64,000 bases of DNA from Macrostomum lignano (GCA_002269645.1 NIVC01001522.1:210247-274246), one strand, 5' to 3'. Counted from the first letter of the stretch, positions 2,464 through 52,140 are shown. Made by a program: numbers and translations. Notes: a model not told the origin generated them from the sequence alone.

Positions 2464-2537
2464 AAGTAGTTTAAAAGTAGTAGTGTAAATTTTTTTATTA
2501 AAAGCTTTTATTAAAGGACTAAATAAAAACACTTAGA

Positions 2538-3635: not shown

Positions 3636-3662
3636 TAAGCTTGGCTACATGTATAGGATTAT

Positions 3663-4065: not shown

Positions 4066-4585
4066 CTTGGGAATATTTTCTATTTAGGGGTAATGACTGT
4101 GATCTTTGTGAAAGCTATATTTTCTTGTCTGTTTATTAATTTTACCAATCTTGTTGGCGAAGCCTTCTGCAAAAACATCTTAGTTCTTATCCTTTTGACT
4201 ATAGCTTTGAACTGTTCTGTCATTATTCGATAATTCGTTGGAAATTAATAAAGACGATATTGTTCAGTTTATATAATAGACTAATTTAGTTTAATTTAAA
4301 ACAAATTTATTGTGTCATAACTGCTTCGTGTTAGTAGTAGTAGTAGCAGCGATTGTTTTAATTAACTCGAATGATTGCATTAGGTCCAATTTCATTTCAG
4401 TCAGAACTTAGTATGCATGATTCTCTCAGATTCCATTTTGCTAATACGTGTATTAGATTTTTCGTTGCAAATTAATAAAGACGATATTAAACAAGAAAGG
4501 GTAACACATTTTCTTTTCAAGATATTTTATTCTCAAATAAGATTTATTTAAGAAATCTTAAATAAGCATAAGCAGGCTGCTGCTG

Positions 4586-8610: not shown

Positions 8611-11506
8611 TCTTTAGAACATTAAGGGTGAGGTGTTACATTATCGCAGGGTGTATTTTTGCCACTGCCAATGTTGATAGCAGGCTGGCTGCAGACGTGC
8701 TGGGCCTGACAGAGAGTTGGTTGAAATGGACATTTCGCTGCTTTGTATGTCCCTGGTAGATTTCTTCCACTCTATTACGTGGGCCAATCCAGAAGTTCAT
8801 GGTAATTACCGGTGCATTTGTGCAGATTAAGGAAGGGATTTTGTTATGTCTGCTCGTTAGAATAGAATTTGAATTCTACTAATTTGTGAAATTATTGGAC
8901 TCGTTTTCCAGGCGATATGGAAATTCAATCAAATAATGTTCTGATTGTGGGTTGAGCCGGAGAAAGTCGTAATAGTTGGATGATAAAAGCTCAATAAGAG
9001 TCCTGTCCCAAAGCGATAGGAAAATTCTGATTGATTTTCTGATTGAGGGGTTGAGCCAGAGACAGTCTTGATAGTTCAGTAAGAATCCTGTCCATATTCT
9101 GCTGAGGGGTTCGGCCAGAGAGTCTGGTAGTGCGGTGAGAGAAGCTCAAATTGGCAGCTTTTTGTGGTGGGAGAAATTTTCTGATTGCATGAACTTTTGG
9201 AATGGCCCTCGTACATGCAAATGCAGCCAGAGGGGGTTGAAGCAGCCTTTGCAAACCCCAGATAGTCTGTTGTGATGGCTTTAACTCTGCCGAAGCCAGT
9301 CCCAAGCCTGGTTGCAAAAAGAGGAGGGTTGCAAACTGTTCTTACATGCTCATTAGTAATGCCTGAAATTTACATGCCCCAAGTGAATGCCTCTGTCCAG
9401 CTGTGCAGACTAAAGCAAGCCAACAAGTGGTAAGATTGACACCAATGAAAAATTCTTAACAGAATTTGTGCAATGGTACCATCTTGTTGGCGAAGCCTTC
9501 TGCAAAAACATCTTAGTTCTTATCCTTTTATGACTTTGCAATTGTAAATATACGGAGTAAATAAAATGACTACTTGCATTTGATTGCGTTTTTAAATTTG
9601 CTATTAACATTACAGTGCAGAGTTTTTCTTGTTTTCGTCTGAATACGCAGAGGAAAGGATTATTGAGTACTAATTAATGGGAGACTGCTCCCTAATTTGT
9701 GACTGTAAAGAAGAATGAAAATTTTATATACTAAAATATTTATTGTCAGCCATTCTGACTTTTTGTTAGTTAGATTGCTTCAAATGTACAGGTCTGGGTG
9801 TGTGATCAATATGGTAGCTGCAGGTTGCAGTGTTTTACATGTACTTTAAGTATATGTAGTTATGAGCGTAGTATATACTTTGTTGTACTTGTTTCCGCTA
9901 ATGACTGACTGCGCCCCTCTCCACCGGCTGGGGCGCAAATGAAGAAGTTATTCCGACACTGTACGTTGCTAAGTACACTGGCGTGTCCCCCCTGGGGGAA
10001 TGGGTAGGCGTATATGATAGTACAGTCTTGTCAGGCAGCTAGAAAAGTTTGGTTGAGAATTTTTTAACAAGCCTCTTTACTGGGGCGCCAACGATGTCGA
10101 ATTTTTTCCAAAGCGCAGTACATGCTAAGTACACTGGCTTATGCCCCCTATTCCCTATTATCTGGGGTAATGAGAGTGAAAGCGGCCCAAGCACAGGTTC
10201 GTTTTTATTACGTTAAAAATCTATACATTAATCACACACTTGTTTCGCAGTTAAGGAATTAATCAAGTGGAGTTGAATATGTCGATGAAAAATTTAGTGT
10301 AGGAGTCGCACAGATATATTGCATCAGTTAACCAGAGCTGTGAATCCATGTATTTCAAAGTTGTATGCATGATTTGCAAAATGGGTCAAACCAAAGTCGT
10401 AAATAACTTACTAGAGTTGAGTGGCGAGTGACTTAAAATAAAATTGCGTTTTAATTACCGTATGAGAGAATAAAGATGAAAAGGGTTAGGACCACATGCA
10501 AACTGCAAAAAAGAACTGTAGCTAAAAGGAAATTAGGCTGTGGGAAAATATTGGTATTTGAGTCGCAATTTTAAAAGTACAAAAGTACAAAATCTAAATT
10601 ACGGAAACAATACTTTTAACAAGTCAAACCAATTAATTATACGTCATTGTACTAGGCAATATCCACTATCAAATAACCACACTGGCTCCAAATACAATAA
10701 CATTGTCGACACAATGTTTTTGTCTGTAACCGTTAAAACAGTTAACAGCAGACATCATTAAAATTGGTGCAACGCCAGTGACTCCCTGCATGATAGGCAA
10801 CTGTTGCCTTTGGCCTTTGGGAAACAAATTTTTTTTAGCTGTAGTTGCTTTTCCAGCCGTTGCAGAGCGTACTGCTTGCACCGCAACAGAAGTAGTACGC
10901 TATTGCTCTGAAAGAAGGCAAGTAGGTTGAATTGTCAGTTTTTTAAATTCTACACAAGCATGTTTTATTGGTACATAAGCCCCAGGGCCAGAATTAAAAT
11001 GAGAATTCGATTCCTAGCCCCCTCCCTAAGAATTCTTTTTATTTTAAAGGATTCGTCCCTTGCTTATTTGCCACCCCGAAGGGGGGCGCTAGATTGCTAG
11101 TATGAATCTACACGTGAATAAGTGGGACTAAAATCTCATGAATATAAATTGTTGCAAATAATTACCGCACAAGCCTCAGGCTGGGGATTCTTCAGTGTCA
11201 GTGAAGAACACTGAATCATCGACATCAAATCGTTGTCTCTTCTGTTGCAGCTGCTTCGATCTGGTGGCTGAATTTTGTCGTTTCGACCATCGGCGCATCT
11301 GCCTCTCAGATGCTTTACTTTTGTGCTGCTGGGCTGGGCTGCTGGGACGATCGCTAGCGTCTTTTAGAGCCCTCCTGGCAGCTCCCTCCATCTGCAGATG
11401 GCTGATAGGATTCCTCTTATAGGTTCGAGTCAGTGCCTCTGAATAAAAACGAGCGGAAAAAGTATGTGCTTAGCAAAAAAAACATACTAGAAAGAGTAGA
11501 GTTACT

Positions 11507-12977
11507 TCTGTTTTTGATCTTAGCTACTATATCGGGGTAGCTGTTCTCTCGGGTCCCTGTTAGGGACTACCTCCTCTATTGTTTCTTGTATTTTTTCCGT
11601 GAGTTTATCAACCACTTTGTCAAGTTCATCGGGAGTGGAGATACGGGATCGAGTCATACTGCAGTTTTCTAGTTTGTCTTGGAGAACGTATCTGAAGGCC
11701 TCCCAATCCGTGTGCCAGTAGCTTTTGGGTGGTTTTGGTTTAGCCTTGGAGTTGGGATCAATAAAAACTTTAACAATAATGGGTAGGTGGTCACTGTCGA
11801 GATCATCGCCAACAATGACATCACTGACAGAGTTAATCAGGTCAGGGGAGCAGATGCCTAGATCAAGGACATTACCAATAATGTTGCCCCCTCTATTATT
11901 AATCCTGGTGCAGTCACCAAAGGAGTTTAGGATGAAGGGGGAATCCGGATGGTTATCAAACCATTCATACAGTTGTTTCCCTGGGAAGTTTTCTACACTG
12001 CCACCGCCCAGCATAGAGTGGCGACAGTTGAGATCTCCTTTAAGTAAGGATCTAGGTTGTGAGAGCAGCTGCTCAGGCAGTGCAGTGCTGATTTGGTCAG
12101 GATTGGGAGCTCTGTAAATAAGGGAAATTGTTCCTGGGGTTATTGTTCGGAGTGACATTGAGGCTAATAAACTCATGGTTAGAGTTGTCATAAAATTTTT
12201 TAACGTTCGAAACATTTAAGGTATTTTTATAAGCAATTGCCAGACCTCTCCTGAAGTCAGGAGTGTCGTATCTGATAACAGCGTAGCCTTGTACATAGCC
12301 TTGTAGTTTCGGAGAAAAGACCAATGTATATATTGTCATTGTGCAACCACATAATAATCTCGTGCATTTTGTTGCTAAGTTTATTGCAGTTTAGGTGACC
12401 AAATTTCAGTGCGCTATTGGAATTTTTACTATTGAAAGCCATAATTAATTATCAGATTTCTCAGTGCTTAGGATCCGCCTCCGCTCACCAAAGTGGCTTT
12501 GGCTTCACCCGCCCTGGCAGCAGGCACCCTTCCGGGATTCAAGAAGGTCGCCAGGACCTCTGTCACTACCCGAATAGCAAGCTGGCTTGCTTCCCAGGCA
12601 GTGAGCAGACGCCCCGGTTCGATCTCCATGATCCGGTTGAGTGCCTCAAGTACCACCCCGAGCACATCATTCCGCGTGAAGCCCCTCTCACCGGTTACAA
12701 CGTTGGGGGCAGCATTGTCCGTTATTGGTTCAGCTTGGGCTGGCTCAGCGCTGCTGGTCGGTGGTGCAGACTGCTTGCTCATTACCGGCACGGCGTTGTC
12801 AGCAGGAAGCGCGGTCTGATTGGTCACCATGTTCGGTTGGGCAGCAGCAGTGGCAGCGGCACGATTGGAGTAGACAATGGGGCCGAGAGTAGGCCTTGGT
12901 CTTGGTCTTGTCATGTCGACGTAGGACAGTGGCCCCGGCACACCAAAGGTCTCGGCCAAGAACTGACTATCTATCCT
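11507..12977 (-). mobile_element. Internal LINE fragment (ORF1 C-terminus + ORF2 APE endonuclease), pseudogenised
   Basis: Near-identical to 38914-40391; APE motifs GDLNCRH and SDHLPI; frameshifted; truncated at both ends. Confidence 0.9.
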
Positions 12978-15159
12978 ATCACTAGTACCTAATTGCTCAG
13001 CAAAAAATATAAACTTTCACTGTTTTTATAATTCAAAAATGCATTAAAAATCTACATCTTAAAGTGACGAATGGTATCTGGAAAAAACAGCAAACAATAA
13101 CAGTAACATGAATTTGTTTTTTAAAAATGAAAAGTAGTACAAACAGAAGTACAGCATATTTTTACACACAATAATTTCATGAAAATGATAACATAGGAAA
13201 AAAAGGAAAAAGAGCAAAATTGCTTATGAAACTAAATGGAATAGTTATTCCATTCCATAAATGCTATGTAGATCTCATAAACTCTTTTACACATATAATT
13301 AATATTCTAATCGAACATTATGTATATTTTCAAATAGTATAGTGTGACGACGTCGTTAGCATCTTAAATTTTTAGTTTCTATGTGAGTTTTTATTACTTA
13401 AAATTATTGTAGTTGATTAATTTGCAGGTTCCCCAGCTATTAATTTAATGTAACTTATTTAGAAAAAATGTACTTGAAGTTTTATTTATTCAAGTCCAAG
13501 TTATTACTACTTTTTTGATAGACATCTTAGGTTTAAATGAATCGGTTTTCCCCGCCAATTTAAATTGTTGCTCGCGCTCGTTTTTGTTCTCTCCGCTACT
13601 CGGCATTTTGTCTCGTACCATGCGTGTCAACACTACTAATAATTGAACTAGCTAACCAATAAATAAATAACTAATAAATAATTAACGAATAATTAATTAA
13701 TCGCTGACTACATCTCGAACTCGCTACGTCACAATAGTTTTGCATCAGTAACTTTCTTTTTAGTATATCTCTATTTAAAACCATACAAATTATGTACGTA
13801 TAAAGTTTACTTTTTTCACATTTTTTATAACTTTTAGTAATCGATCTATTTTTAAAAGCACTAATACACACTATTTTGTTTTAATGTATCCAGCACCATC
13901 GACCCCGCTTTTCTTGCTATAAATATAATCAAAAAATATAATGGAAACTAACTTTGCTTGCCTTACTAACTTTTGGCTCGTGCCTCATTTGAGTGTCGAC
14001 TTTTTGTTCTGAAAATAGCAGTTTAGTCATTGCTCTTTATTTCATGGTCGTTTTGTCTTTCTTCCCCAGAAAAACATTTTGTTCAATATAGTGGGCGTGT
14101 TGCCACCTTTTTCTCCCCCCATGGTGTACAATACAGACCCACAGGCGTCCTGCCTAATCCCCCAGACTTCTGACAGGCGTTCCGCCTATTCCCCAGATGT
14201 ACTGTCTACCAGGCGTCTTGTCTATCTCCAAGATCTCCTGTCTATTAGGCGTACTGCCCTCCTCTCTAAAGGACGTTCGATCCAGCAATAGCACCCTGTC
14301 ATTCCCCACCGGTATTCCCTATTAGGCAATAGAGTCCCCTAAAGTAGTGCGTCCCGTTTTTTCAAGGCAACTTTAGTCCGCCGCCTTGTTCCTATCCTAA
14401 TAGCTAATTCCAATCTAAATAGGATGTTTTACTATTTAGATATAAATAGTGTCTTACTGCTCGGGCATTGAAACGCTACCCTAGCTGCCAGGTATATTGC
14501 CACAATGTTGTCACAACGTTGATATCTAATGTTGCTGAATTGTTGATGTCAATGTTGCGGCAACATATTTTTTGTCGTTGCAAATGTTGTCATATGTTGC
14601 CATATAATGTTGCCATAACATTAAAGCAATGTTGACATAACAACATTTTGAAATCTCTTTTCTTCCTACTGATAGTAATGCAGCGAGATTATTTAATTTG
14701 TAGTAGATTGTTTTAATATTCTGAAAAAAAAACAAAACGAGACGCAAGACCACCCTGCAGCTTTAATCCAATTCAATGGGAAGAATGAAACAAAATGGCG
14801 CACTCGAAGTACAACAAAAAGTTGTTGGTTTTATATTTTTCTAGATGGAATTTTACTTCAAAACAGAATAAATTGCAAATGGTTTTTACTGCGCAAAGAG
14901 ATGTCAATAGGGTTTGTTGTAAATTTCTAAGTCAATGGTATGCAAATATAACTTAGATAAGGGGGAAATAATATGGCATACAAAGTCATACAAAGCGGCT
15001 TTAAGAAGGAAAATCACTTTGCAGCATCATTTTTTTATATTCACCCACAACTAGAGGCTTCAATACAAAAATGTCCTTTGCTATCAAACAATCAAAGAAA
15101 TTCGGACAGCTGGATGTTGACAAAATAACTTGGTACATTGCGATTGATTTTACACGCCA

Positions 15160-33335: not shown

Positions 33336-34800
33336 CAAGGGGTGTCCCATAAGTCGGTGCAATTTCTTCACTACAGCCTTTTCTGACCGATCAGAAATAT
33401 TTATTTTGTAGCAGTTAACAAGAGAATTATCTGCCCGTTAAAATGACTTTTTGTTTATTTCTGTATCTGCTGGCATTCTTGAGATATGAGAACTTTTCTG
33501 CCCCACCCCCTGTGCTACTACAAATTGCCATAGATCAAAGCTTTGTACCTGATGCACGAAACAACGAAACATTCAACGAATCAACAAAACATCCGCAACA
33601 TGAAAGCTGAGGAAATAACATTGTCAATGAACATTGTCCTGAGGCTTCTCCACATAGTCACCACTGCGCTGCACACACTTCTGCCATCGGCTGTGCATGT
33701 CGTCAATGGCATCAGCAAAATCTGAGCGCGGCATCTCATGCAGGAGAACTTGGCGAGTCAATGCTTCCAGGCTCCCACAAAAAGCAACGATTCGTCCATG
33801 CAGCAGCTTCTTCATCCTTGAGCCCTTGACGGCGATCACATTTGCCCACTTCTTCGGGAGCTCGTTGATTGCCTGCCAAAAGACGGCGCGGAATTCCTGC
33901 GAGCGAAGCACGCGCATCGCCTCGGCCTCCACTTGCGCGCGGTCGCTGCTAAGCACTCGACCCCGCATGAGCTGCTTGAATGCTCCAAATACTCTGTTGT
34001 CACGTCGATTCGCAATAACAGCCACCTTGAGGCGCTCAAGCTGTTCCTGGTAGTGCACTGAGTTGACAGTCTTGCCATCCGGCAGAAAGTCGACCAGCAG
34101 GGGACTTTGACCATCGAAGAAGTGAGAGATAATGATCTTCTTTGTCCACGTCGCCCGAGGCTTCGTAGGCGAGTTTTAGCCTCGCACGCACCACTCAGCG
34201 TCTTTCTGCTTGCCAGCCGACTCAAAAAAGGGCAGCCACGTCTCGTCGCACGTTATGATCTTGTCAAGGAAAGGCTGACCCTCGAGAGTGTAGGCAGCCT
34301 GCAGCGCGTGTGCAACCTCGACACGTCGACTCTTCTGCTCTGGCGTGAGGATGCGACGAATCCATCGACAGGAGAGGCGGGACAGCCCAAGATCGGTCTT
34401 GAGAATCTCGTGCACATATGGATTTGAAAGGCCAACAGTAGCAGAAAGCCTGCGAAGTGAGCTCTTAGGCGCAGCTTTTACAGCAGCTTCAACAGCAAGA
34501 ACGCTTTGCAGACGGGCGCGCACCTGCGCCGGTGTGGAGCCAGATGGGCCAGGCGCGATGTCAAGCGTGGTGCGGCCCTCTTTGAACTCGCGAACCCACC
34601 GTCGGACAGTCGGTTCGCTTGGCACGGCCTCTCCATATGTCGCAACAAGCTCTGCGTGCATTTCAGCCGCATTTGTGCGTCCGCTGTCGATCCAGAAGCG
34701 AATGACGCCACGCATTGTTGGTTTGATGTCTTTTATTGAAGCTGATGTCATCTTGTGTTTTTTAGCAACATTTAGCCTACTGAACGGTTAACTTGTGCCA
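33336..34800 (-). mobile_element. Mariner transposon with a defective transposase (33624-34751)
   Basis: HTH region (TVRRWVREFKEG), IITCDETW and C-terminal RWQKCVQRSGDY. Frameshift at ~34180; the YSPDLAP region is deleted. One TIR, TA|CAAGGGGTGTCCCATAAG, at 33336; the other was not found. Confidence 0.85.
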
Positions 34801-35119: not shown

Positions 35120-35380
35120 AATTGGCTCCATGTAAAATAGCCGTCTTCTCGTCGTTTAAACGAATGCGTTGTCCGATTTTGTTCGAACTTTGCACCATTC
35201 GATCAGAAATTTTTCCGTGACGGTACATGTATCTTGGCTAAGAAATTGCTAAATGCTAAAGGGATTAAATATTCGAAAAGCATGCTTTTTTTCAAAGGTC
35301 AAGCAAACTTTTCGACTTGAAATTCATTGTAAGAATGCTAGAAAAAAATTGACTTGTTGAATTCTTATTCTGAAATATAT
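35120..35380 (+). mobile_element. Partial copy of the Helitron 5' region, continuing at 43460-43790
   Basis: Homologous to ~1911-2140; homology resumes at 43460 (tgcatc...) and matches 2140-2530, including the tRNA-like segment. Confidence 0.75.
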
Positions 35381-37017
35381 TGTGGACAAGCGTGGTACCT
35401 GCGGTTTAGGCTACTGGTTTGTTGGTTTATTTTTAATTTGATTAATCTGAGCTCGAGAGACTCCGGGCTTAGATTAAGCTGGAAGATTTCCTAGCTACCT
35501 TAATTTGAATGAATAGTTGTTACGATCTAGGTCACCTTGCTCTACTAATCTGCTATTACGTACTTTTATTTGGTAGGTCGCTGCCACCAGACTAATGCCC
35601 CTTATAATTAATGTTAAATTAAAATAAGTGAGACAAGAGTCAATTTCATATAAGATTATTTTAGATCAAACAAACAAAAGAAATATTATTTAACCAAATA
35701 TGCAAAGAAAGTACACAATTAATCCCTATGTTAACAATTCGGTAGACTCCGATTCTTAATTATATTAATGGTAGACTTCCTTAGTCTTTCCCTATTTTAT
35801 CTAACTGACTATACTAATATTCCTATTCTCGGTAGACTCCGTTTGACTAAGTGGTAGACTCCTTCTTAGCCTCCCTATTTTACCCTTTTTAGAGTTTTAT
35901 CCTTAACTTACCCTTAATTTCCTTAAGTTTCTATATTAAATCTTTGAAAGGAAACTCCCTTATTTTCTATTTTTGAATTGAGATATTTTGTCTCTATAAA
36001 TACTGTCCTGATGGACGGTCCTGAACGGATCCTTGACTGATTGTCCCGAACGGATGCTTCTTCCGAGGCTTTTTCACTTTCACTTCACTTGATAGGTACG
36101 AGCGCGTCAGCCCCTATCCGGGGCTCTTACGCTACTAGTATATATTTGGTTTTCCGAATTATTGGTGTAAAATTAGTTCGAGGTTTGAGAAATAAATCTA
36201 TAATACAGTATAAAAACAAATTGTTTGTGGATAAATATAAAATATTTGGTGTAATAGATAAAAATAAAACATTTGATACAATTCTAATAAAACAGCATTT
36301 ATAACAAATATTTGGTGCAATAAATCAAATATAAAACATTTGGTGCAATAAAACAAATAAAACAGCATATATAACAAATATTTAGTGCAATGTATGAGTT
36401 GGAAATTTAAAAGAAAAATATTTTTAGTTAATGTGATTTAAATAGCAGTTTTAATAGGTGTAATGATAATAAAACAAATAAATACCAATAAATCAAATAT
36501 ATATCACAAAGGTATTTAGGTCTGTTTGGACTTGTCTTTAATACTAAATTTGTAAATTATCTGCCGATAATTCAAAGAGGGACAGCCATGTTCTAAAGAT
36601 ACTACCACAATGAAAAGTGCTGACCCTACGAAAACGAAGTTTTCGCAACGGGAGAACCAGATTTTGAAAACTATAAATACCGTTCCTGTACCTGCAGGAG
36701 CAAGCACAGCTTACTCAGTCTAAGTTAAGGGCCTCACGGTCCATCTGGTTTGGGGTTCCAGATTTAAAACGTCCCCCGGCCTGAGTGAGCTGCAGTGCAG
36801 ACTAAATGAATAAAACTGAGTGCGGACTAAGCAGCCACGTGTCCCTACGGGGAATAAGCTCGGGCCGCCGTTCCGTCATACGGCAAAATTTTTTCGCTTT
36901 AACTTATTTTGCCTTATTTAGTAAATAGACTGTACAAACAGACTCGAATATTTTTTGAAAAACAGCAAGAGGTTCTCACGCAGAGACTGCTCGAGGTAAG
37001 TAAAAGATTATTTTAAG

Positions 37018-39876
37018 TTATCTTATGGCTTTCCTGAATTTTGTTGTGACGGGTTCTCTAAACCCTGGTCTGCACCATTCTTTGTGATCAGAGTGAAAGT
37101 CATGGACTTCCGATAGCAGAACTTTTTTGTACCACCTAAGGCCTAGGTTCCAAACCCTCTCCTTAAACCTAGGCATCTTGGTGATATCATGCAGGTAGCT
37201 AATTTTGGTGTATTTGGGGGCTCCAAGCACCAATCTGAGTGCTTGATTTTGAAGAAGCTGCAGTCTTTGGATGAGTGCATCGGAGGCGTTGACAAGAATC
37301 GGCGCACCGTATGTCATGCCGCTCTCAATGTAAGCCCTGTAAAGGAGTCGAAGCGCGAGCTGAGAAATTCTTGTGTTGCGGGCAATTCTCCTCAATGCTT
37401 CAAGCTTGGCCATGGCGATGCCGGCAGTCCTCGAGATGTGCTGCCTATAGTTTAAGTCTCTGTCAAGCGTGACACCAAGAAACGTGACAGAGTCATGGTA
37501 CGGAATAAAGTCCTTTCCAAGTTTGAGTGGAGGATTGGCGGGGCCGGTGGAATAGGGACTCTTGTATTTGAAGAAAGCCACCGCCTTGCTTTTGGTGGGG
37601 TTGATGGATATGCCCACATCATCTAGCCATTTCTTGAGTATGACCAGGTAGCCGTTCAGTCTCTTGGCCGTCATCTTGGAAGTTTTCGCGCTCGCCCAGA
37701 CTGCCAGATCGTCAGCAAATTGACTTTTCTTGACTTTAATGTCGCGCGGGACAGGAATCGAGCTGACATAAATGATAAACAATAGTGGGGAAAGAACCCC
37801 TCCTTGCGGGACACCTGCAGCCGGACTGAAGCCTTCGCTGACCGCCCCCCCCCCCAACCTGAATAGTAATTTCCCTGTCGTCGAGGTAGCTGGAGATGAT
37901 CCTGATCATGTTGTGCGGCAGGTCGCTGTCAAACATTCGGTACCTAAGGTAGCTATGCCAGACACCGTCGAAGGCACCTTTGACATCAAAGAAGACTCCA
38001 AGAGTCACATGTCTCCATTGGTTCATTTTATGTATATCGTCTGTGAGTCGCACAATGTTATCAAGCGTACAGTGATCTTGTCTGTACGCACATTGGTCTT
38101 CGTTAATAATACCTTTGTTTTCTAAAATCATTCTAAGATATCTGGCAATTACTTTTTCGTACAGTTTTCCTAAGCAGGAGGTTAGACTGATGGGCCTGTA
38201 GTTATTAATTTCATGTCTTGATTTTTTTGGCTTCGGTATCATTTTAATAGTTGCCCGCTTCCAGGTCTTGGGAAAGTAGCCCAGAAGAAAGCTTGTATTG
38301 AAGATTTTGGCAATAGTCTTTACAGAGTCTGGGCTAAGCCCTTTCTTTAGGACAATATTAGGGATCAGATCGGGGCCTGGAGCACCCCCAGACCTAAGAT
38401 TTTTGGTTTCCATAAGGACATCTATATCCAGGATGTTGAGGATGTCAGACTCCATGTCCTCTTTTCCAGGGTCACTAGGGTCAGCCCTGTCACGGTGGTA
38501 GGTCAGAGCTCTGACCATACTGTCGTGGGGACGGAAGTTCTCATGATCTTCTTTAGAGATGACTTTATCATACTCGTAAAGCTTGGACTTAGTATCGGGA
38601 TGAGGCAACATTTGGTCTCTAAGGAAGTCTTGAAATAAGTTAGCAGTCTCTTTCTCTGTTTCAGCCGTAACCCCGTTGTAGCTAAGGGCGGGAAAAGAGA
38701 ATGGTTGGATGGCTTGCCCAGTCATTTTTTTTATGTCAACCCAGAATTGACGCGGTTCTTTTCTGTAACTGGTTTTTGCAATTTTGTTACACAAATTTTC
38801 AAATTTCCTATATCTATGCATTTTTATAGCATTTCTGACCTCTTTAGCAGCTTGGTTGGCTTGAACTCTAAACGCATCAATTCTGGTTTGTTTGAAAAGT
38901 TTTCTAAGCTTTCTTCTGTTTTTGATCTTAGCTACAATGTCAGGTGGGAGTTGTTCTCTCGGGTCCCTGTTAGGGACTACCTCTTCTATTGTTTCTTGAA
39001 TTTTAACCGTGAGTTTATCAACCACTTTGTCAAGTTCAGCAGGGGTGGAGATACGGGATCGAGTCATACTGCAATTTTCAATTTTGTCTTGGAGAACGTA
39101 TCTGAAGGTCTCCCAATCCGTGTGCCAGTAACTTTTGGGTGGTTTTGGTTTAGCTTTAGAGTTGGGGTCAATAAAAACTGTAACGATAATGGGAAGGTGG
39201 TCACTGTCGAGATCGTCGCCAACAATGACATCACTAACAGAGTTAATCAGGTCAGGGGAGCAGATGCCTAGATCAAGGACATTGCCTTTAATATTTCCTC
39301 CTCTATTGTTAATCCTGGTGCAGTCACCAAAGGAGTTAAGAATGAAGGGGGGGTCCGGGTGGTTATCGAACCATTCATAGAGTTGTTTTCCCGGGAAGTT
39401 TTCTGCACTGTCACCGCCCAGCATGGCGTGGCGACAGTTCAGATCTCCTATTAGTAAGGATCTGGGTTGGGAGAGCAACTGCTCAAGCAGTGCAGTGCTG
39501 ATTTGGTCAGGATTTGGAGCTCTGTAAATAAGGGTAATCCTGAGAGTGTTGCTGGGGTTATTGTTTGGAGTGACATTAAGGCTAATAAACTCATGGTTAG
39601 AGTTGTCATAAAATTTGTTGACTTTCGATACATTTAAGGTATTCTTATAAGCAATTGCCAGACCTCTTCTGCATCAGGAGTGTCGTATCTGATAACCGCA
39701 TAGCCTTGAACATAGAACTTGTCCTTATTTTTAAGATCAGTTTCGGAGAATAGACCAATGTCCACGTTGTCATTGTGCAACCACATAATAATTTCGTGCA
39801 TTTTGTTGCTAAGTTTATTGCAGTTTAGGTGGCCAATTTTCAGTGTGCTATTTGAATTTTTACTATTGAAAGCCAT
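37018..39876 (-). CDS. LINE ORF2: APE endonuclease + reverse transcriptase (frameshifted)
   Basis: HLNCN, SET, GDLNCRH, SDHLPI; NYRPISLTSCLGKLYE, FFDVKGAFD, GVPQGGVLSPLLF, FADD. Frameshifts near 39650, 39500 and 37860. No RNase H seen. Confidence 0.92.
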
Positions 39877-39903
39877 AATTACATTTTTCAGGTTTCTCAG
39901 TGC

Positions 39904-41399
39904 TTAGGATCCGCCTCCGCTCACCGAAGTGGCTTTGGCTTCACCTGCCCTGGCAGCAGGCACTCTTCCGGGATTCAAGAAGGACGCCAGGACCTCCGTC
40001 ACTACCCGAATAGCAAGCTGGCTTGCTTCCCAGGCAGTGAGCAGACGTCCCGGTTCGATCTCCATGATCCGGTTGAGTGCCCCGAGCACATCGTTCTGCG
40101 TGAAGCCCCTCTCACCGGTTGCAGCGTAGGGGGCAGCATTGTTCGTTGTTGGTACAGCTTGGTCTGTCTCGGCGCTGCTGGTCGGTGGTGCAGGCTGCTT
40201 GTACATTGCCGGCACGGCGTTGTCAGCAGAGAGCGCGGTCACCATGTTCGGTTGAGCAGCAGCCGCGGCGGCGGCGGCAGCAGCACGATTTGAGTAGGCA
40301 ATAGGACCGAGAGTAGGCCCTGGTCTTGCTATGTCGGCGTAGGACAATGGCCCTGGCACACCGAAGGTCTCGGCCAAGTTCTGACTATCATCTAGCCTAT
40401 CATTATTTCCTAATTGATTAGTTGGTTTTGTTTGATCGAATTTAATTTTGAGTGCTTTAATGCGGCCATGTTCTTTTTCTGTGGCAAGCGCGCTAGCAGT
40501 GCGCACCCTCTCGCACCTGAAGGAGTAGGCTGGATGGTTTCCACCACAGTTGGCACACTTGAACGCCGTGTCCTCTGGGCAGTCACCTGAAAAGTGCGCG
40601 CCAGCACACTTGCTGCAAACAAAGTCAGCACTGCAGCGATTTTCTGTGTGCCCCAGCCCTTGGCAACGCTGGCACTGTACTTCTTTGACTGGAGGCAGGT
40701 TGTGAGACTCTTCACAACGGAATCTGAGCGCTCCAAGTCGAATACCGTTCTCAGGCAGAACTCGATGGTACCTGTGCTGTTTGAGAAGAGTCTAATTAGT
40801 GGCGTAGGACGCCCCGTTGCCTTGGAGATTATTCTTAGAGCTCCGTTAAACTGTAGATGCGCATAATTTTCCTCAAGGTACGTCAAGAGTTCCTCCACTT
40901 CCACAGCGAGAGGGACCCCCTTGACTATAATAGATTGCACCTTGGGTGATTTTAGTGGCTTGCGCAGTCTGTCGTCAGCCTGTTGACGCGGCCTGTTTGA
41001 AGGCAGGCGTCTGGATACTGTATGTCCATTTATTTCAGATTGTTTTAGTGGTGCTGTTAATAATCTGTTCATTTCTTGTTGTGTACTGGCAAATACATAG
41101 TACCCCGGGCTGTGGTACAGCTCTTTGACGGAAATTATGCGTGTTCCTGAAAAATTAGTTTTTAAATATTGCTCGAATTTAATTGGATTTTTTGCCTCAA
41201 TAGGCATTTCGAAGACAACAGGCGTGATTTTCGTTAGTTTAGTGTTGTTAGACTGCTGATTGCGTGCGCTTGATTGCTGAGCCTGGGCAGATTGCTGGCT
41301 AGCCTGATCTGGTTGCTGTGTGTGGGTGCCTGATTGCTGTGAGTGAGTGCTTGATTGCTGTGATTGAGTGTTTGCTTGCTGGTTAGTAGCTTGCGGCAA
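39904..41399 (-). CDS. LINE ORF1 gag-like region with three CCHC zinc knuckles
   Basis: After a 1-bp deletion near 40755 the frame reads CQRCQGLGHTENRC, CSKCAGAHFSGDC, CANCGGNHPAYSFRC; it is preceded by an RRM-like segment (SIIVKGVP). Confidence 0.88.
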
Positions 41400-41597
41400 A
41401 CTGTAGCAATTAGGCTTTTGTGTGTGAGTGTCAGACGATTGATGCTTTGGCTTAGTGCTTGGCTGCTGAGTGGCTTAGTGTGCTTGCTGAGTGTTTGAGT
41501 GTTGCTGAGTGTCGTTAGTTTGCTTGTTGCTAGACAGAGTGGCTGGTTGCAGAGGCTTGGCTGAGTCAGATTGCTGAGTGCTCTGCTTGTTGTTTAC

Positions 41598-42657
41598 TTA
41601 AGCATCAAGTTTAGTAATTTGAGTAGCTTGTTGGTTGGTTGTTGGCTGTGAGCGCCGATTGGCTTCGTTTGACTTAGTTTCTGGTTTTAGTCTAGTTTGG
41701 CTGTTAGATCTGGCCCTAATTTTGTTAATATTCTCTGCATCCTGCCTGGCTCTGCGACGAACAGATTCTTCGTCGTCCAGGTCGCAGCTAATCGCGCAGT
41801 CAGACGGCAGAACGCAAGGATTAGAGCCTAAAGCAGGAGCAAGATCGAGCCTACTATCGTATGTGAGGCGGAAAGTTAAGTTGACCCGGAGATCTTTGAC
41901 TTTGGCGTCTCTGAGGATGCCATGTTGAAGGTGCTTCTGAGTAGCTCCACTCATTACGAGAAGAGAGCCACTGGCCAGTTTCTGCGAAAAGACCACATTG
42001 GAAGACGTGGACTTAGTTCGAAGCTGAAAGTCCCGTTCAGCTCCGAAGGAGAGAGAAGCGATAGTCGGATTGGGACCTAGTTCTGGTTCATCATCACTAT
42101 GCCAAGGAATATTCACAGTCCCGTCCTTGTAGAAATTGACAAGACATGAGTTGAATAATGGCATGTGAAACTCTGCGCTAAGCCAGGTGACCAGCCTGTT
42201 GATCAGCGGATGCCAGTCATCATTGGCTTCAATCTTAGTGTTACCATAGCTGTACTCTGGGCCAAACCACACTATTTTCCTAGATTCTGGCCGGCCGTTA
42301 GTTAGATGGTGGAAAGCTTTTGGTTCTATTTCTTTTGTTAGTATTCGGAGAATTTCTCCTTCAGAGTTCTTGAGAGCATTTGGAAAATAGCTAACATTAC
42401 AGTTGTTCGGTAATTTTGCAATTATATTGTTGCCTTTGTCAGTTTGCAGTGAAAATGTTACGGTTTGGTTGTCGCTAGTGGAACTAGTGTCTAATTTGCC
42501 CCTAACAGGTGGTCGGCTACTCTCACCGTTGGAGCTTGCAACTGCTTGAGGGGGTGTCTCAGGAAGAGGTGCACTAGACGGCGACGCCGACTGCTGAACT
42601 GGTTGGCGACCTGTCTGTCTCACGTGTGGATCTTTTAATACTACTTTCAACCTCCAT
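41598..42657 (-). CDS. ALKBH2/3-like 2OG-Fe(II) dioxygenase domain at the N-terminus of LINE ORF1
   Basis: YSYG, NSCLVNFYKDG, WHSDDE (HxD), ASLSFGAERDF, LASGSLLVMSG.TQ..LQH, RVNLTFR. Likely ATG at 42657 (MEVESSIKRS), followed by an early frameshift. Confidence 0.92.
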
Positions 42658-43217
42658 TAGCCTAGCAACTATAATATAAGTCTAGATTAAATTAAAGAAA
42701 AGCCTTAAAACGGTAGGCTAGTAAAACTATTATTTTTAAAACAATTAAAACTGAATTACTAATAAAAATCAAATAGGCCTACTAAGAGTAGTTGATAACT
42801 ACCAAAATACAAAAAGGGCCCTAATTAGCCACTAAACACTAAATTCTATTTAGACGAGGAGCCTGGCGCCGAATTGCAGACGTCGCGCGCGGTTGCAGGT
42901 GCCTGGCGCCGCTGCTGCCGCACACCGCTGTAGTCGCTAGACCGCGCCGCTGCCGCCGCACCGCCGATGCCGTCAACCAGCCGAGACCGAGGCCGCCGAG
43001 GTCGCAGTCGCCGAGCCGCAGATGAAGCCGGAGTCGTCGAAGCAGCCGGAGTCGTCGAAGTAGCCGGAGTCGTCGAAGCAGCCGAAATCGTCGCAGAGAG
43101 CCAATGCAATCGCCAGGTGAGTCGTCACCACAGATGCTAATGCCCTCTATAGCCAGAACCACCCGTAGGCCTACACTGTAGATACCTGTAGTGGTTCAAA
43201 GACTATAGAGTTTATTA

Positions 43218-43231
43218 GTTACCATGGCAAC
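43218..43231. promoter_or_regulatory. RFX X-box at the 5' end of the LINE
   Basis: GTTACCATGGCAAC matches the RFX consensus GTTRCCATGGYAAC and lies 3 nt inside the TSD-defined 5' end. Confidence 0.6.
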
Positions 43232-43791
43232 GATGGATGCTTCTTCCGAGGCTAAACAGCCTTCTACTAATAGAGGAACCCGCTAATACTCGAATTCCCA
43301 CAACTTCAGATATTTCCCCGAGGGTGAACTACTAACAGTAGCGTAAAAGCAAAACTGCTTATTCTCGATTTCGGAAAACTAAAAATAATTATCTCGACGA
43401 ATCGGAAACCTTGGCAAACGCCCTTAGCAAAACTGCTTGAACTAAACCCCCCTACTACAATTGCATCATAACTGAATTGTGACTCTAACTTGAATTGCCT
43501 CACAGTATTGAAAATGCAGTGTGGAAGCGTAGCATCAGACATAATTTAGATTGCGTAACTATATTGTCAACTTTAATTGAGACTAATACTGACTTGCCTG
43601 GGAAATTAATTATGTCATAACTGCTTCGTGAGTGAGTGTTGAATTATATAAGTGCTACAATTTCATTTATAAATTCGATGAGATCTAGCCTAGATGTGAA
43701 CAGACTGGACTGCTAATGCAGCGACCTGGGTTCGAATTTTAGTAGTGAAAATTTTTTATTAAAAGCTTTATTAAATAAATAATAAAGGACT

Positions 43792-44123
43792 AGAGGCGTC
43801 ATGTAAAAAATCATAGAAGCGTCATGTAAAAAAATCATAGAAGCGTCATGTAAACAATCATAGAAGCGTCATGTAAACAATCATAGAAGCGTCATGTAAA
43901 AATCATAAAAGCGTCATGTAAAAAATCATAGAAACGTCATGTAAACAATCATAGAAGCGTCATGTAAACAATCATAGAAGCGTCATGTAAACAATCATAG
44001 AAGCGTCATGTAAACAATCATAGAAGCGTCATGTAAAAAATCGTAGAAGCGTCATGTAAACAATCATAGAAGCGTCATGTAAACAATCATAGAAGCGTCA
44101 TGTAAACAATCATAGAAGCGTCA
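43792..44123. repeat. 23-bp minisatellite agaagcgtcatgtaaacaatcat (~14 copies)
   Basis: Direct tandem repeat. Confidence 0.95.
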
Positions 44124-50611: not shown

Positions 50612-52140
50612 CTAGTTGCTTCGGTCGAGACTTTCTTTCGATAGTAGCTGCTGCACTACGACTGGATTCCGACTCCCGATTATCAGGCAGAGCCTTTCGG
50701 ATGGTGCTATTTTCCTGTGATTCTTCTGTTGAGTTGATTCAGTGTGTTGATTGCTTGGCTGATTTGAGGTGTCCTGGTCGGCTGTACTTGCCGCCGGTCT
50801 ATTGTTTTCAGAGTTAGTATCCTGGTTGGCTATACTGACCGCCGGTTTACTGGTTTTTACTTCTGCCTGGTCGGCTGTACTGGCCGCCGGGTTACTGGTA
50901 TTTTCTTTTTTTAGCCTGGCTGGCCGCACTGGCCGCCGGCCCACATTGCTGATTTTGACTTTGTTGCTGGTTGCTCATGTTGCCTGTTGGCTGCAGATCT
51001 AGTTGGTGCCTCGTGTCCTGATTGCTTGGCTGTTGCTTGATGTCCTGTTTGCCTGGTTGCTTTGCTGTTTGATCTTGACTGCGTGACTTCCTATCCACTT
51101 GGTCCTGGTTGCTTTTGCTTGCAGAGTTTTGCCTGACTCTCTCCAGATTGACTGCCTCCTCTTCTGCCCTGCGTTTGACAGTCCTCATCGTCTAGGTCAC
51201 AAGTGATGGATATCGCGTTTTGGGTGAACCTGACGCACGGGTTGGGCGGCAGAGCGTCGTCAGCGGCAGAAATTCTATTGTCCTTGGTAAGGCGGAACGT
51301 AAGATTTATCCTCATCTCTTTGCAATTTGGATCCCTTGGCACTGAGTGCTGCAGAAGGCGCTGGGTGGCACCACTCATTACCAGGAGGCTGCCATTGCCA
51401 AGCTTTTGTGAGTACATGATGTTCGCCGGTGATGATTTGGAGCGAACCTGGAAGTCACGAGCGGCTCCTAGAGATAGAGAGGCAATTACCGGGTCTTCGC
51501 CGAGCTCTGTTTCATCGTCAGAATGCCAAGGTATTCCAATAGTGCCGTCCTTGTAAAAGTTTATTAAACATGAGTTGAAAAGTGGCAGCCTGAATTCTAA
51601 ATGCAGCCAAGTCACAAGACGAGCTATGATAGGGTGCCAGTTGTCATTAGCTTCGATTCTAGTACCTCCGTAGCAGTAACTGGGCCCGAACCATGCGATT
51701 TGACAGGCCTCAGGTTTTCCGTTAGTGCAGTGGTGGAATGCGCTAGGTGCAATTTCTTTCATTATTGCCTTGTAGAGAGCTGTCTCGGAGCCGTTTAGAG
51801 CATTGGGTGCATAGGTAATGTTGCAATTTTGCAGTAAGTTAACTGTTTTCTCGTTGCTTCTGTTTGGCCTAGGAATGCTAAGGAGTGCCATATCAGTCGC
51901 ATCATATTTCAGGTCAGGATACGCTGTTTGAGGCTGCTTGCCAGCAGAGCGGCCATCTGCAGACCTTGGAGAGGATTCAGGCAAGAATGTTCTTCTTGCC
52001 GGTGTAGCTCTGCTGTCTTCAGGTCCTGCTGAGGCTCGAGTATTGGGCTTTTTGGTTGAAGCGACCACCGGCGACGAAGTGTCTCGAGCTGGCCTCTTTC
52101 CGTTGTCAGTGACTTCCATTTCTTCTTTAATTGTGCTCAT
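50612..52140 (-). CDS. Second, diverged AlkB-ORF1 (5' part of a related LINE), truncated after the linker
   Basis: WHSDDE, ASLSLGAARDF, LLQH, RINLTFR. Flanks are homologous to 41598-42657 (NCNI/VxY.PNAL, NPCV...CDLDDE). Frameshift at ~51190, then a Q/S/K-rich linker; no gag or RT follows. Confidence 0.88.

What the first reader, a model, noticed from the sequence alone, without database searches (positions are those of the whole stretch)
36071..43234. TSD-bounded full-length LINE with an AlkB demethylase fused to ORF1
Seen: an exact 19-bp duplication (36052-36070 and 43235-43253) brackets the whole unit, so the AlkB ORF lies inside the element rather than being a neighbouring host gene. The AlkB region is intronless and in the same frame as the gag-like ORF1 (42650 and 41399 are both 2 mod 3). 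They are separated only by two TAA stops (41598-41600 and 41475-41477) in a Q/S/T-rich linker, where CAA codons are expected. Reconstructed ORF1 is AlkB-linker-RRM-like-3xCCHC, about 900 aa. The HxD..H..R..R catalytic set is intact. Known: ALKBH2/3 enzymes remove m1A/m3C, which block reverse transcription, and some plant RNA viruses carry AlkB domains. The ORF1 modules I know in Jockey/I/CR1 elements are RRM, CCHC, PHD and esterase. Inference: ORF1p brings a demethylase into the RNP to repair or de-mark its RNA template or cDNA, possibly countering host methylation. I cannot confirm that this is undescribed.
Basis: partly seen in the sequence, partly recalled or inferred. Interest (0 to 1): 0.93.

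Follow-up and report, generated by a model that had tools for sequence, protein, structure and literature searches.

The report
LINE retrotransposon carrying an AlkB demethylase
This is a dead copy of a flatworm-type LINE whose RNA-binding ORF1 protein has an ALKBH3-like demethylase domain at its front, and intact relatives show the fusion marks a whole LINE clade, which I could not find described.

Summary
An exact 19-bp direct repeat (0 expected by chance) brackets a 7,164-bp minus-strand LINE (43234→36071). The layout is: 5'UTR, AlkB domain (Pfam 2OG-FeII_Oxy_2, E=4e-31), Q/S/T linker, two RRM folds, three CCHC knuckles, a 27-nt spacer, APE+RT ORF2, and a 3'UTR ending in a hairpin and an (AAGTG)n tail.

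AlkB and the gag-like part share one frame, broken by two TAA stops. The copy is dead: its only nearby ATG is out of frame, ORF1 has one frameshift and ORF2 has two.

The fusion is not a one-off capture. Uninterrupted ORF1s of 757-962 aa with the same layout occur in at least four other diverged families. Three of these families (two with intact ORF1s, one with a partial ORF1) are followed by APE or APE/RT ORF2s, and more families occur in Macrostomum lignano. A second diverged AlkB-LINE fragment lies in this window. The AlkB core is as conserved as the CCHC region (46%), and all catalytic residues are kept.

The fold matches human ALKBH3 bound to ssDNA. A LINE with a more distant ORF2 (29% identity) has no AlkB. 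A Penelope-like element elsewhere also carries AlkB in its ORF1.

The function is inferred, not shown: removal of m1A/m3C from the element's own RNA or cDNA. The closest described analogues are the orchid Gypsy AlkB and the AlkB domains of RNA viruses.

The parts
36052..36070 (.). Target-site duplication, copy next to the element's 3' end
   Evidence: Exact 19-mer GGATGCTTCTTCCGAGGCT. It has only two matches in the window even with 3 mismatches allowed, and 0 are expected by chance.
43235..43253 (.). Target-site duplication, copy next to the element's 5' end
42658..43234 (-). 5'UTR, containing an 18-bp tandem repeat at 43026-43093
   Evidence: Read directly, the N-terminus of the M. lignano gene model P0002 resembles the translation of this repeat region. 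This suggests the region upstream of AlkB is also part of the element in related copies.
42655..42657 (-). Probable original ORF1 start codon (ATG), now out of frame with AlkB
   Evidence: The frame that opens MEVESS... stops after 27 codons. That a frameshift occurred here is inference.
41598..42650 (-). Open stretch holding the N-terminal low-complexity region and the AlkB dioxygenase domain. The core runs about 42404-41862. It ends at the first TAA (41600-41598).
   Evidence: PF13532 at E=4e-31. The HxD...H...RxxxxxR motif is intact. The AF2 model has pLDDT 86.7, and its best PDB matches are human ALKBH3-ssDNA complexes with TM 0.74-0.89.
41226..41597 (-). Q/S/T-rich disordered linker in the same frame as AlkB. 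It holds the second TAA (41477-41475).
   Evidence: Intact relatives have an open, Q-rich linker in the same place.
40749..41225 (-). Two tandem RRM folds of ORF1
   Evidence: AF2 model with pLDDT 85.8 and beta-alpha-beta-beta-alpha-beta topology (the second RRM's last strand lies beyond the frameshift). The best Foldseek hits are the tandem RRMs of HuR and hnRNP A1 UP1, at E about 5e-5. Pfam itself finds no domain here.
39904..40749 (-). Rest of ORF1, read in a shifted frame: three CCHC knuckles (40674-40513), a low-complexity stretch, a conserved C-terminal helix, and the stop at 39906-39904
   Evidence: The frameshift at about 40749-40752 is located by the tblastn alignment of P0121.
37018..39876 (-). 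ORF2 with APE endonuclease and reverse transcriptase domains, broken by two frameshifts (about 39690 and 37853). No RNase H domain was found.
   Evidence: Pfam Exo_endo_phos_2 and RVT_1. The region is 40% identical to the intact 948-aa ORF2 of L002, aligned in three frame segments.
36071..37017 (-). 3'UTR: a 70-bp tandem repeat (36240-36391), a conserved hairpin (36106-36126) and a terminal (AAGTG)n-A tail that abuts the TSD
   Evidence: folding z-score -2.06. The hairpin core GAGCCCC-N4-AGGGGCTGAC is identical in L002, and the outer stem differs there but still pairs.
50700..52140 (-). Second, diverged AlkB-LINE fragment. An ATG-initiated 349-aa AlkB ORF (52140-51091) is followed by a linker, and the fragment breaks off before the RRM region.
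   Evidence: It is 45-50% identical in protein to the first AlkB and matches PF13532 at E=8e-28. Its C-terminus and linker resemble P0121 (73% over 45 aa), an open AlkB-linker-RRM-CCHC protein.
11502..12995 (-). Partial second copy of the same LINE family, covering only the ORF1 tail and the APE domain
   Evidence: 87% nucleotide identity to element positions 2840-4346. It says nothing about AlkB.

Best explanation
**What it is (about 0.95 confidence).** This is a structurally full-length but inactivated copy of an APE-type non-LTR retrotransposon. It was inserted by target-primed reverse transcription and has a 19-bp TSD. Its ORF1 protein is a single polypeptide of roughly 900 aa. In order, it has an N-terminal low-complexity region, an ALKBH2/3-type (closest to ALKBH3) Fe(II)/2-oxoglutarate dioxygenase domain, a disordered Q/S/T linker of about 200 aa, two RRMs, three CCHC knuckles and a C-terminal helix. 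The fusion is an inherited, conserved feature of a LINE subclade. That subclade is found in Macrostomum flatworms and in several unidentified sequencing samples.

**How it most likely works (inferred, about 0.5 confidence).** ORF1p binds the element's own RNA in cis through its RRMs and knuckles. The flexible linker lets the tethered dioxygenase scan that RNA, and possibly the single-stranded first-strand cDNA. There it would oxidatively remove N1-methyladenine and N3-methylcytosine. These lesions or marks disrupt Watson-Crick pairing and stall reverse transcriptases, so removing them would raise the yield and fidelity of full-length cDNA.
For: **Shown by the tools**
- The TSD and the element anatomy.
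- AlkB identity and an intact active site.
- Sequence matches: ALKBH3 is best (98 bits), then ALKBH2 (70 bits). E. coli AlkB is not detected even at E<=10.
- Fold matches: ALKBH3-ssDNA complexes are best, at E=1e-17 and TM up to 0.89.
- One-piece ORF1s of 757-962 aa with the same domain order in four further families.
- An ORF2 follows the AlkB ORF1 in L002 (intact 948-aa APE+RT), L005 (APE, cut by the contig end) and L010 (946-aa APE+RT). M. lignano genomic locus L004 shows the same order, though frameshifted between AlkB and the RRM region.
- Across five ORF1s that are more than 50% diverged, the AlkB core shows 46% mean identity. That equals the CCHC region (46%) and exceeds the RRM region (37%) and the linkers (about 20%).
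- L011, a LINE whose ORF2 is only 29% identical to the window's, has a 411-aa ORF1 without AlkB. AlkB is therefore a derived trait of this subclade.
- A Penelope-like element carries an AlkB domain inside a 1,012-aa ORF1, seen in two samples.

**From established knowledge**
- ALKBH3 prefers single-stranded DNA and RNA carrying m1A or m3C.
- AlkB domains of plant RNA viruses repair RNA. An orchid Gypsy AlkB demethylates RNA in vitro (PMC9289625).
Against: - No activity or substrate was tested, and m1A/m3C on LINE RNA in this host is unknown.
- This copy cannot make the protein.
- For this exact family I have no second copy that covers the linker. That its master element had an open frame therefore rests on relatives.
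- ALKBH3-type enzymes have other reported substrates, so the target could be a regulatory mark or DNA rather than RNA damage.
- The origin of the domain is unresolved. The retroelement AlkBs group together in an NJ tree, but with only 28% bootstrap support.
Confidence: 0.6

Rival explanations
1. The domain erases a host-installed regulatory RNA mark (m6A, or m1A used as a signal) on the element's transcript. It would thereby counter epitranscriptomic restriction, as proposed for the orchid Gypsy AlkB, rather than repair chemical damage.
For: The orchid Ty3/Gypsy AlkB demethylates m6A in vitro, and its authors propose that it acts in epitranscriptomic control of TEs (PMC9289625). Recurrent capture by LINEs, a Penelope-like element and RNA viruses fits an arms-race role.
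Against: The window domain is ALKBH3/ALKBH2-type. ALKBH5 ranks only 50th among fold matches, at TM 0.56 against 0.74-0.89 for ALKBH3. FTO does not appear among the matches listed.
Confidence: 0.2
2. The domain works on DNA. It would repair 3mC or 1mA in the single-stranded cDNA or at the integration site. One possible source is 3mC made as an off-target product of host DNMTs, which this flatworm lineage is reported to retain.
For: The best structural matches are ALKBH3 and ALKBH2 bound to DNA. A review states that M. lignano retains DNMT1, DNMT3 and ALKB2, and that DNMTs make 3mC as a by-product (PMC9246332).
Against: ORF1 proteins act mainly as RNA-binding partners of the element's transcript. 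Nothing here shows DNA methylation of these elements. This rival is not exclusive of the main explanation.
Confidence: 0.12
3. AlkB is a passenger picked up by this one copy from a host mRNA, through template switching or 5' transduction, and has no role in the element.
For: The AlkB stretch is intronless, lies at the 5' side inside the TSD, and is closed off by stops in this copy.
Against: The same architecture is found in at least eight diverged families or loci. These include intact ORF1s followed by APE or APE/RT ORF2s. The AlkB core is as conserved as the zinc knuckles, and all catalytic residues are kept.
Confidence: 0.02
4. The domain is kept as a non-catalytic nucleic-acid-binding or protein-recruiting module.
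For: No activity data exist. The methyltransferase domain of DIRS1 elements is thought to be inactive (PMC4738411), so there is a precedent.
Against: The Fe(II) ligands (HxD, H) and the 2-oxoglutarate arginines are invariant across 45 aligned sequences, including all the retroelement copies.
Confidence: 0.05

Closest known systems
Type I LINE ORF1 proteins (RRM plus CCHC knuckles, as in I, Jockey and CR1-like elements; Khazina and Weichenrieder classification, cited from my own knowledge)
   Same: It has two RRM folds followed by three knuckles with the spacings CX2CX4HX4C, CX2CX3HX4C and CX2CX3HX6C. A separate APE+RT ORF2 follows, there is no RNase H domain, and the element has a TSD and a 3' hairpin with a short tandem-repeat tail. 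L011, whose ORF2 is 29% identical to the window's, has a plain ORF1 of this type.
   Different: An enzymatic AlkB dioxygenase domain plus a disordered linker of about 200 aa precedes the RRMs, roughly doubling the length of ORF1. The exact LINE clade could not be assigned because no Repbase or Dfam reference set is available here.
Phalaenopsis orchid Ty3/Gypsy elements with an AlkB ORF (PMC9289625)
   Same: A retrotransposon that has fixed a 2OG/Fe(II) AlkB-family domain, with a proposed action on the element's own RNA.
   Different: Those are 25-kb plant LTR elements that carry AlkB in a separate extra ORF. That AlkB is of the plant m6A-demethylase type (homologous to plant RNA demethylases such as ALKBH9B). 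Here the host is an animal, the element is a non-LTR LINE, the domain is fused in frame to ORF1, and it is ALKBH3-like.
AlkB domains in RNA-virus replicase polyproteins (Alpha- and Betaflexiviridae, Closteroviridae and others)
   Same: An AlkB domain is embedded in a protein of an RNA-templated replicator. The fold is similar: BFVD hits include replicases of Vitivirus, Ampelovirus, Picornavirales and other Riboviria, at E from 1e-9 to 1e-12. The proposed role is repair of the replicating RNA (as cited in PMC9289625).
   Different: Those are viruses with RNA-dependent RNA polymerases. Here the domain sits in the RNA-chaperone protein of a reverse-transcribing genomic element.
Human ALKBH3 (and ALKBH2)
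   Same: ALKBH3 is the best sequence match (98 bits) and the best fold match (TM up to 0.89 normalised to the target). The metal and 2OG ligands are the same.
   Different: Identity is only about 31-34%, and the domain is fused to a LINE gag-like protein. In a weakly supported NJ tree the retroelement AlkBs do not fall inside the animal ALKBH3 group.
Penelope-like elements
   Same: Related loci L001 and L006 carry an AlkB domain inside a 1,012-aa ORF1 upstream of an RT/GIY-YIG ORF. That RT is 61% identical to the Penelope-like RT in this window at 44272-45884.
   Different: This is a different retroelement class, with a GIY-YIG nuclease and no APE. Its ORF1 has no RRM/CCHC module. The window's own Penelope-like copy shows no AlkB.

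Membership tests
APE-type non-LTR retrotransposon (LINE) | Reverse transcriptase domain of the non-LTR type | tested here: met
   RVT_1 at E=2.7e-18 and 6.1e-15 on the two ORF2 pieces. The region is 40% identical to an intact 948-aa APE-RT ORF2.
APE-type non-LTR retrotransposon (LINE) | N-terminal apurinic/apyrimidinic-like endonuclease in ORF2 | tested here: met
   Exo_endo_phos_2 at E=1.4e-8. The N-terminal part aligns with the APE domain of L002.
APE-type non-LTR retrotransposon (LINE) | Target-site duplication flanking the unit, no terminal repeats, and a 3' tail | tested here: met
   Exact 19-bp TSD. Self-BLAST finds no LTR or TIR. An (AAGTG)n-A tail abuts the TSD.
APE-type non-LTR retrotransposon (LINE) | An empty site carrying a single copy of the 19-mer | not testable with these tools
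   No searchable eukaryotic genome collection is available. The only paralogous stretch (1933-2529) lacks homology near the junction.
Type I LINE ORF1 (RRM + CCHC) | RRM fold or folds | tested here: met
   AF2 model with pLDDT 85.8. All top Foldseek hits are tandem RRMs, at E about 5e-5. Pfam gives no hit.
Type I LINE ORF1 (RRM + CCHC) | CCHC zinc knuckles at the C-terminal side | tested here: met
   Three knuckles read directly at 40674-40513. zf-CCHC is detected in relatives P0126 and L010.
A named LINE clade (Jockey / CR1 / I) | Placement in an RT phylogeny with reference elements | not tested
   No reference TE library is available. The ORF2 search gives only 25-30% identity to unnamed arthropod LINEs, one of which is labelled 'transposon X-element'. 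The lack of RNase H argues against the I clade.
AlkB family, ALKBH2/3 subgroup | 2OG-FeII_Oxy_2 domain with the HxD...H iron ligands and the RxxxxxR 2OG-binding motif | tested here: met
AlkB family, ALKBH2/3 subgroup | Closer to ALKBH3/2 than to other AlkB clades | tested here: met
   Sequence scores: ALKBH3 98 bits, ALKBH2 70 bits, E. coli AlkB not detected. Fold scores: TM 0.74-0.89 against 0.5-0.66 for E. coli AlkB, ALKBH5 and ALKBH6.
AlkB family, ALKBH2/3 subgroup | 2OG-dependent demethylase activity on m1A/m3C | not testable with these tools
   This needs biochemistry.
Chimeric retrocopy or 5' transduction of a host gene | The extra sequence is confined to one copy or one recent lineage | tested here: not met
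   The same fusion occurs in at least eight diverged families or loci.
Orchid-type AlkB LTR retrotransposons | LTRs and integrase, with an m6A-demethylase-type AlkB in a separate ORF | tested here: not met
   There are no LTRs, ORF2 is APE/RT, and the AlkB is ALKBH3-like and in frame with ORF1.

The most novel reading that the evidence does not exclude
A whole subclade of flatworm LINEs, and separately a Penelope-like element, need a self-encoded ALKBH3-like demethylase to retrotranspose. That would mean methylated bases (m1A/m3C) on template RNA or cDNA are a general barrier to RNA-templated replicators, whether as damage or as a host defence. LINEs, Penelope-like elements, LTR elements and RNA viruses would each have overcome this barrier by capturing AlkB.
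Probability: 0.35. Interest if true: 0.85.

Novelty: new variant of a known kind. Interest (0 to 1): 0.78.

Why it matters
The accessory domains known to me in LINE ORF1 proteins are binding or structural modules (RRM, CCHC, PHD, coiled coil), plus an esterase of unknown role. A conserved nucleic-acid demethylase fused to the RNA-coating protein would be a clear case of a LINE carrying its own template-repair or mark-erasing enzyme.

Other RNA-templated replicators also carry AlkB: a Penelope-like element, an orchid LTR element and many RNA viruses. Together these point to base methylation as a shared obstacle. They also supply natural, intact test material, such as the ORF1 and ORF2 of L002, for direct experiments.

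There is also a practical warning. M. lignano database entries named 'Fe2OG dioxygenase domain-containing protein' are, at least in part, LINE ORF1 fragments. This could distort presence/absence surveys of ALKB2/3 in flatworms.

Tried and rejected
- **Empty site.** I joined the two flanks and searched the window. Only one distant paralogous stretch (1933-2529) matches parts of both flanks, and it has no homology within about 200-700 bp of the junction. The test is not informative.
- **Second AlkB ORF.** I suspected that the ORF at 51091-52140 belonged to the Penelope-like RT 5 kb downstream. I rejected this because its C-terminus and linker resemble P0121, an AlkB-linker-RRM-CCHC LINE ORF1.
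- **Possible programmed frameshift.** I checked whether the ORF2 frameshift near the APE N-terminus was conserved. It is not, because L002 has one intact ORF2.
- **Pfam on ORF1.** No RRM or CCHC hit was returned, even at E<=1. A fold search was needed instead.
- **Rfam on the element.** Nothing meaningful was found.
- **AlkB origin.** In an NJ tree the retroelement AlkBs group together and sit outside the animal ALKBH3 group. Bootstrap support is only 28%, so I draw no conclusion about the donor.
- **dN/dS.** The available DNA pairs are either nearly identical (P0128 vs P0269 differ at 1 of 962 residues) or saturated (45-55% aa identity). I used domain-wise conservation instead.
- **Species of the window.** No nucleotide similarity to the fetched M. 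lignano locus. A macrostomid flatworm is likely from the protein hits but is not proven.
- **Literature.** Eight full-text searches found no description of AlkB in LINEs or Penelope-like elements. Repbase reports and subscription journals are not covered.

Full report
**1. The observation**

The 19-mer GGATGCTTCTTCCGAGGCT lies at 36052-36070 and 43235-43253 and nowhere else in the window, even with three mismatches allowed. None of 100 dinucleotide-preserving shuffles produced a match. The bases just outside the two copies differ, so the repeat is exactly 19 bp.

The 7,164 bp between the copies code on the minus strand. On that strand the 3' end reads ...CAAGTGAAGTGAAAGTGAAAA and runs straight into the repeat. 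That is what target-primed reverse transcription leaves behind. Self-BLAST of the unit finds no terminal repeats, only a 70-bp internal tandem repeat in the 3'UTR.

**2. Anatomy of the window copy, 5' to 3' on the minus strand**

- **5'UTR, 43234-42658.** It contains an 18-bp tandem repeat.
- **AlkB stretch, 42650-41598.** This open stretch matches Pfam 2OG-FeII_Oxy_2 at E=4.2e-31.
- **Linker.** A Q/S/T-rich stretch continues in the same frame. TAA stops lie at 41600-41598 and 41477-41475.
- **RRM region, 41225-40749.** Pfam finds nothing here. An AlphaFold2 model (pLDDT 85.8) folds it as two beta-alpha-beta-beta-alpha-beta units. Every top Foldseek hit is a tandem-RRM protein such as HuR or hnRNP A1 UP1, at E about 5e-5.
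- **Frameshift at about 40749-40752.** It is followed by three knuckles: CX2CX4HX4C, CX2CX3HX4C and CX2CX3HX6C (40674-40513).
- **ORF1 tail.** A low-complexity stretch and a conserved C-terminal helix follow. The ORF1 stop is at 39906-39904.
- **ORF2.** After a 27-nt spacer, ORF2 starts at ATG 39876 and ends at 37018. It has APE and RT domains and is split by frameshifts near 39690 and 37853. No RNase H domain was found.
- **3'UTR, 37017-36071.** It ends with a hairpin (z=-2.06) and the (AAGTG)n tail.

The AlkB frame contains no ATG. The only nearby ATG, at 42657, is in another frame and that frame closes after 27 codons. An early indel is the likely cause, but that is inference.

The copy is structurally complete and dead. 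It has two nonsense codons, at least three frameshifts, and probably a fourth.

**3. Is AlkB really part of the element?**

This was the key question, because a one-off capture was a serious alternative. LINE reverse transcriptase can switch templates onto a host mRNA, which would also place an intronless gene at the 5' end inside the TSD. The evidence is against that.

(a) The window holds a second, diverged AlkB ORF at 52140-51091. It starts with ATG, is 349 aa long and is 45-50% identical to the first. A similar linker follows it.

(b) A search with the window's AlkB gave Macrostomum lignano proteins as the only close hits, at 66-68% identity. One of them, P0001, joins AlkB directly to the ORF1 C-terminal helix. 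Another, P0002, starts with a stretch that resembles the translated 5'UTR repeat (read by eye).

(c) A search with the window's RRM/CCHC part returned two proteins:
- P0122 (M. lignano, 696 aa) runs open from AlkB through the linker into the RRMs and knuckles, but starts inside AlkB and has an internal deletion.
- P0121 (541 aa) runs open from the AlkB C-terminus through the linker into the RRMs and all three knuckles.

P0121 aligns to the window across both TAA codons in one tblastn segment (41891-40752). The alignment then continues in the next frame.

(d) An exhaustive profile search found four complete ORF1s, each ATG to stop, of 757, 892, 843 and 962 aa (P0125-P0128). All have the order low-complexity, AlkB, linker, RRMs, three CCHC, C-terminal helix.

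(e) The contigs that carry these relatives give the context:

| Locus | ORF1 | What follows |
|---|---|---|
| L002 | intact, 843 aa | intact 948-aa APE+RT ORF2, 40% identical to the window's |
| L005 | intact, 962 aa | APE ORF starting directly after ORF1 (cut by the contig end) |
| L010 | AlkB-RRM-CCHC (N-terminus cut by the contig end) | 946-aa ORF2, 39% identical to the window's |
| L004 (M. lignano genomic) | AlkB, then RRM/CCHC | APE, then RT; frameshifted between AlkB and the RRM region |

(f) L011 is a LINE whose ORF2 is only 29% identical to the window's. It has an ordinary 411-aa ORF1 with RRM-like and CCHC parts and no AlkB.

The fusion is therefore a derived, inherited character of a LINE subclade. 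It is seen here in at least eight diverged families or loci.

**4. Is the domain under constraint?**

In an alignment of the window's conceptual ORF1 with the four intact ORF1s, mean pairwise identity by region is:

| Region | Mean pairwise identity |
|---|---|
| AlkB core | 46% |
| CCHC region | 46% |
| RRM region | 37% |
| Linkers and tails | 17-28% |

The iron ligands (H184, D186, H243 in window numbering) and the 2-oxoglutarate arginines (R255, R261) are invariant in a 45-sequence alignment. That alignment includes all the retroelement copies and bacterial AlkBs. dN/dS could not be estimated usefully, because the DNA pairs at hand are either nearly identical or saturated.

**5. What kind of AlkB?**

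- **By sequence.** Among solved structures the best match is human ALKBH3 (98 bits, E=4e-27), then ALKBH2 (70 bits). E. coli AlkB is not detected even at E<=10.
- **By fold.** An AlphaFold2 model of residues 70-300 (pLDDT 86.7, pTM 0.81) matches ALKBH3-ssDNA complexes best, at E=1.4e-17 with TM 0.74-0.77 on the query and up to 0.89 on the target. ALKBH2 is close behind. ALKBH6, E. coli AlkB and ALKBH5 are clearly weaker, at TM 0.5-0.66.
- **Outside retroelements.** The nearest sequences are about 200-aa bacterial AlkBs at 40-43% identity.
- **By tree.** In an NJ tree the retroelement AlkBs, LINE and Penelope-like together, group apart from the animal ALKBH3 set. Bootstrap support is only 28%. 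The donor, and whether there was one capture or several, remain open.

**6. Mechanism**

Shown by the tools: an ALKBH3-like catalytic domain with a complete active site, joined by a long low-complexity (presumably disordered) linker to the RNA-binding module of a LINE ORF1 protein, and conserved across families.

From established knowledge: ALKBH3 demethylates m1A and m3C in single-stranded DNA and RNA. These bases block base pairing and stall polymerases. LINE ORF1 proteins coat the element's own RNA.

Inferred: the tethered enzyme cleans the template RNA, and perhaps the first-strand cDNA, so that ORF2p can complete a full-length copy.

The alternatives are:
- erasure of a regulatory mark such as m6A, as proposed for the orchid Gypsy AlkB (PMC9289625);
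- repair of DNA lesions such as 3mC. A review notes that DNMTs generate 3mC and that M. lignano retains DNMT1/3 and ALKB2 (PMC9246332);
- a non-catalytic role, which the invariant active site makes unlikely.

**7. Comparison with what is known**

The backbone is an ordinary type I LINE: RRM+CCHC ORF1, APE+RT ORF2, a TSD and a 3' hairpin with a short-repeat tail. The clade (Jockey, CR1 or similar) could not be named without a reference TE library. The ORF2 search gives only 25-30% identity to unnamed invertebrate LINEs.

Precedents for AlkB in a mobile RNA-templated replicator:
- a lineage of orchid Ty3/Gypsy elements, with a separate ORF, an m6A-demethylase-type domain and activity shown in vitro (PMC9289625);
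- many RNA viruses. My fold search of BFVD also finds AlkB folds in replicases of Vitivirus, Ampelovirus and Picornavirales-like viruses, in giant viruses and in phages.

Eight full-text searches found no report of AlkB in a LINE or a Penelope-like element. The library does not cover Repbase reports or most subscription journals, so I cannot exclude an earlier description.

**8. A related observation outside the finding**

The AlkB search also hit P0003. On Logan contigs from two runs (L001, L006), P0003 is part of a 1,012-aa ORF1 made of a helical/Pro-rich N-terminus, AlkB and a C-terminal domain. That ORF1 sits just upstream of a Penelope-like RT/GIY-YIG ORF. The RT is 61% identical to a Penelope-like RT in this window at 44272-45884. 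The window copy shows no AlkB upstream. AlkB is thus associated with two unrelated retroelement classes in what may be related hosts.

**9. Verdict**

The structural interpretation is supported and extends from one copy to a clade. The functional interpretation is reasonable but untested. I rate the finding as a new variant of a known kind, a LINE with an accessory ORF1 domain and a retroelement with AlkB. Interest is high, because the result is surprising for LINE biology and can be tested directly with naturally intact copies.

**Limits**
- The host species of the window and of the Logan runs is not established.
- The empty site could not be examined.
- No second copy of this exact family covers the AlkB-linker junction.

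Noticed in passing
window 50700-52140 (-): Second, diverged AlkB-LINE fragment. It has an ATG-initiated 349-aa AlkB ORF plus a linker and breaks off before the RRM region. This is a 3'-truncated piece, which is unusual for a LINE, so a later deletion or rearrangement is likely.
   Followed up: partly
window 44272-45884 (-); L001 1805-7083; L006 2120-7398: The window holds a Penelope-like RT. Its 61%-identical relatives on two Logan contigs carry an AlkB domain inside a 1,012-aa ORF1 upstream of the RT/GIY-YIG ORF. The window copy has no AlkB upstream.
   Followed up: partly
window 36106-36126 (-); L002 8992-9012: The 3'UTR hairpin core GAGCCCC-N4-AGGGGCTGAC is identical in two LINE families whose ORF2s are only about 40% identical. 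The outer stem differs in sequence but still pairs. It is a likely RT recognition element, and Rfam has no family for it.
   Followed up: partly
window 11502-12995 (-) and 62503-63987 (-): The first is a partial copy of the same LINE family (87% nt, ORF1 tail plus APE). The second is a related LINE RT (60-70% aa) that runs off the window end.
   Followed up: partly
window 1933-2529 versus 35173-35382 and 43472-43785: Both flanks of the LINE match one paralogous stretch, where the two matching parts lie only 36 bp apart. The LINE therefore sits inside a repeated sequence, but the paralogue lacks about 900 bp around the junction and cannot serve as an empty site.
   Followed up: partly
window 29968-30954 (-), 34176-34751 (-), 49319-49912 (+), 60398-60952 (+): Other transposon remains are present: an LTR-element integrase, a mariner-type HTH, a weak sub-threshold Harbinger-type DDE match (E=0.003), and an RPA-like OB-fold ORF (possibly Helitron-borne). 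The window is a transposon-rich region.
   Followed up: no
window 43791-44123 and 48016-48369: Two satellite-like tandem arrays: 23 bp x 14.5 copies just outside the LINE's 5' TSD, and 19 bp x 18.8 copies.
   Followed up: no
M. lignano proteins P0001, P0002, P0122, P0129, P0270, P0272: Database entries named 'Fe2OG dioxygenase domain-containing protein' or 'hypothetical protein' are fragments or chimeric gene models of LINE ORF1s. They could inflate counts of ALKB2/3 genes in comparative surveys of flatworms.
   Followed up: partly
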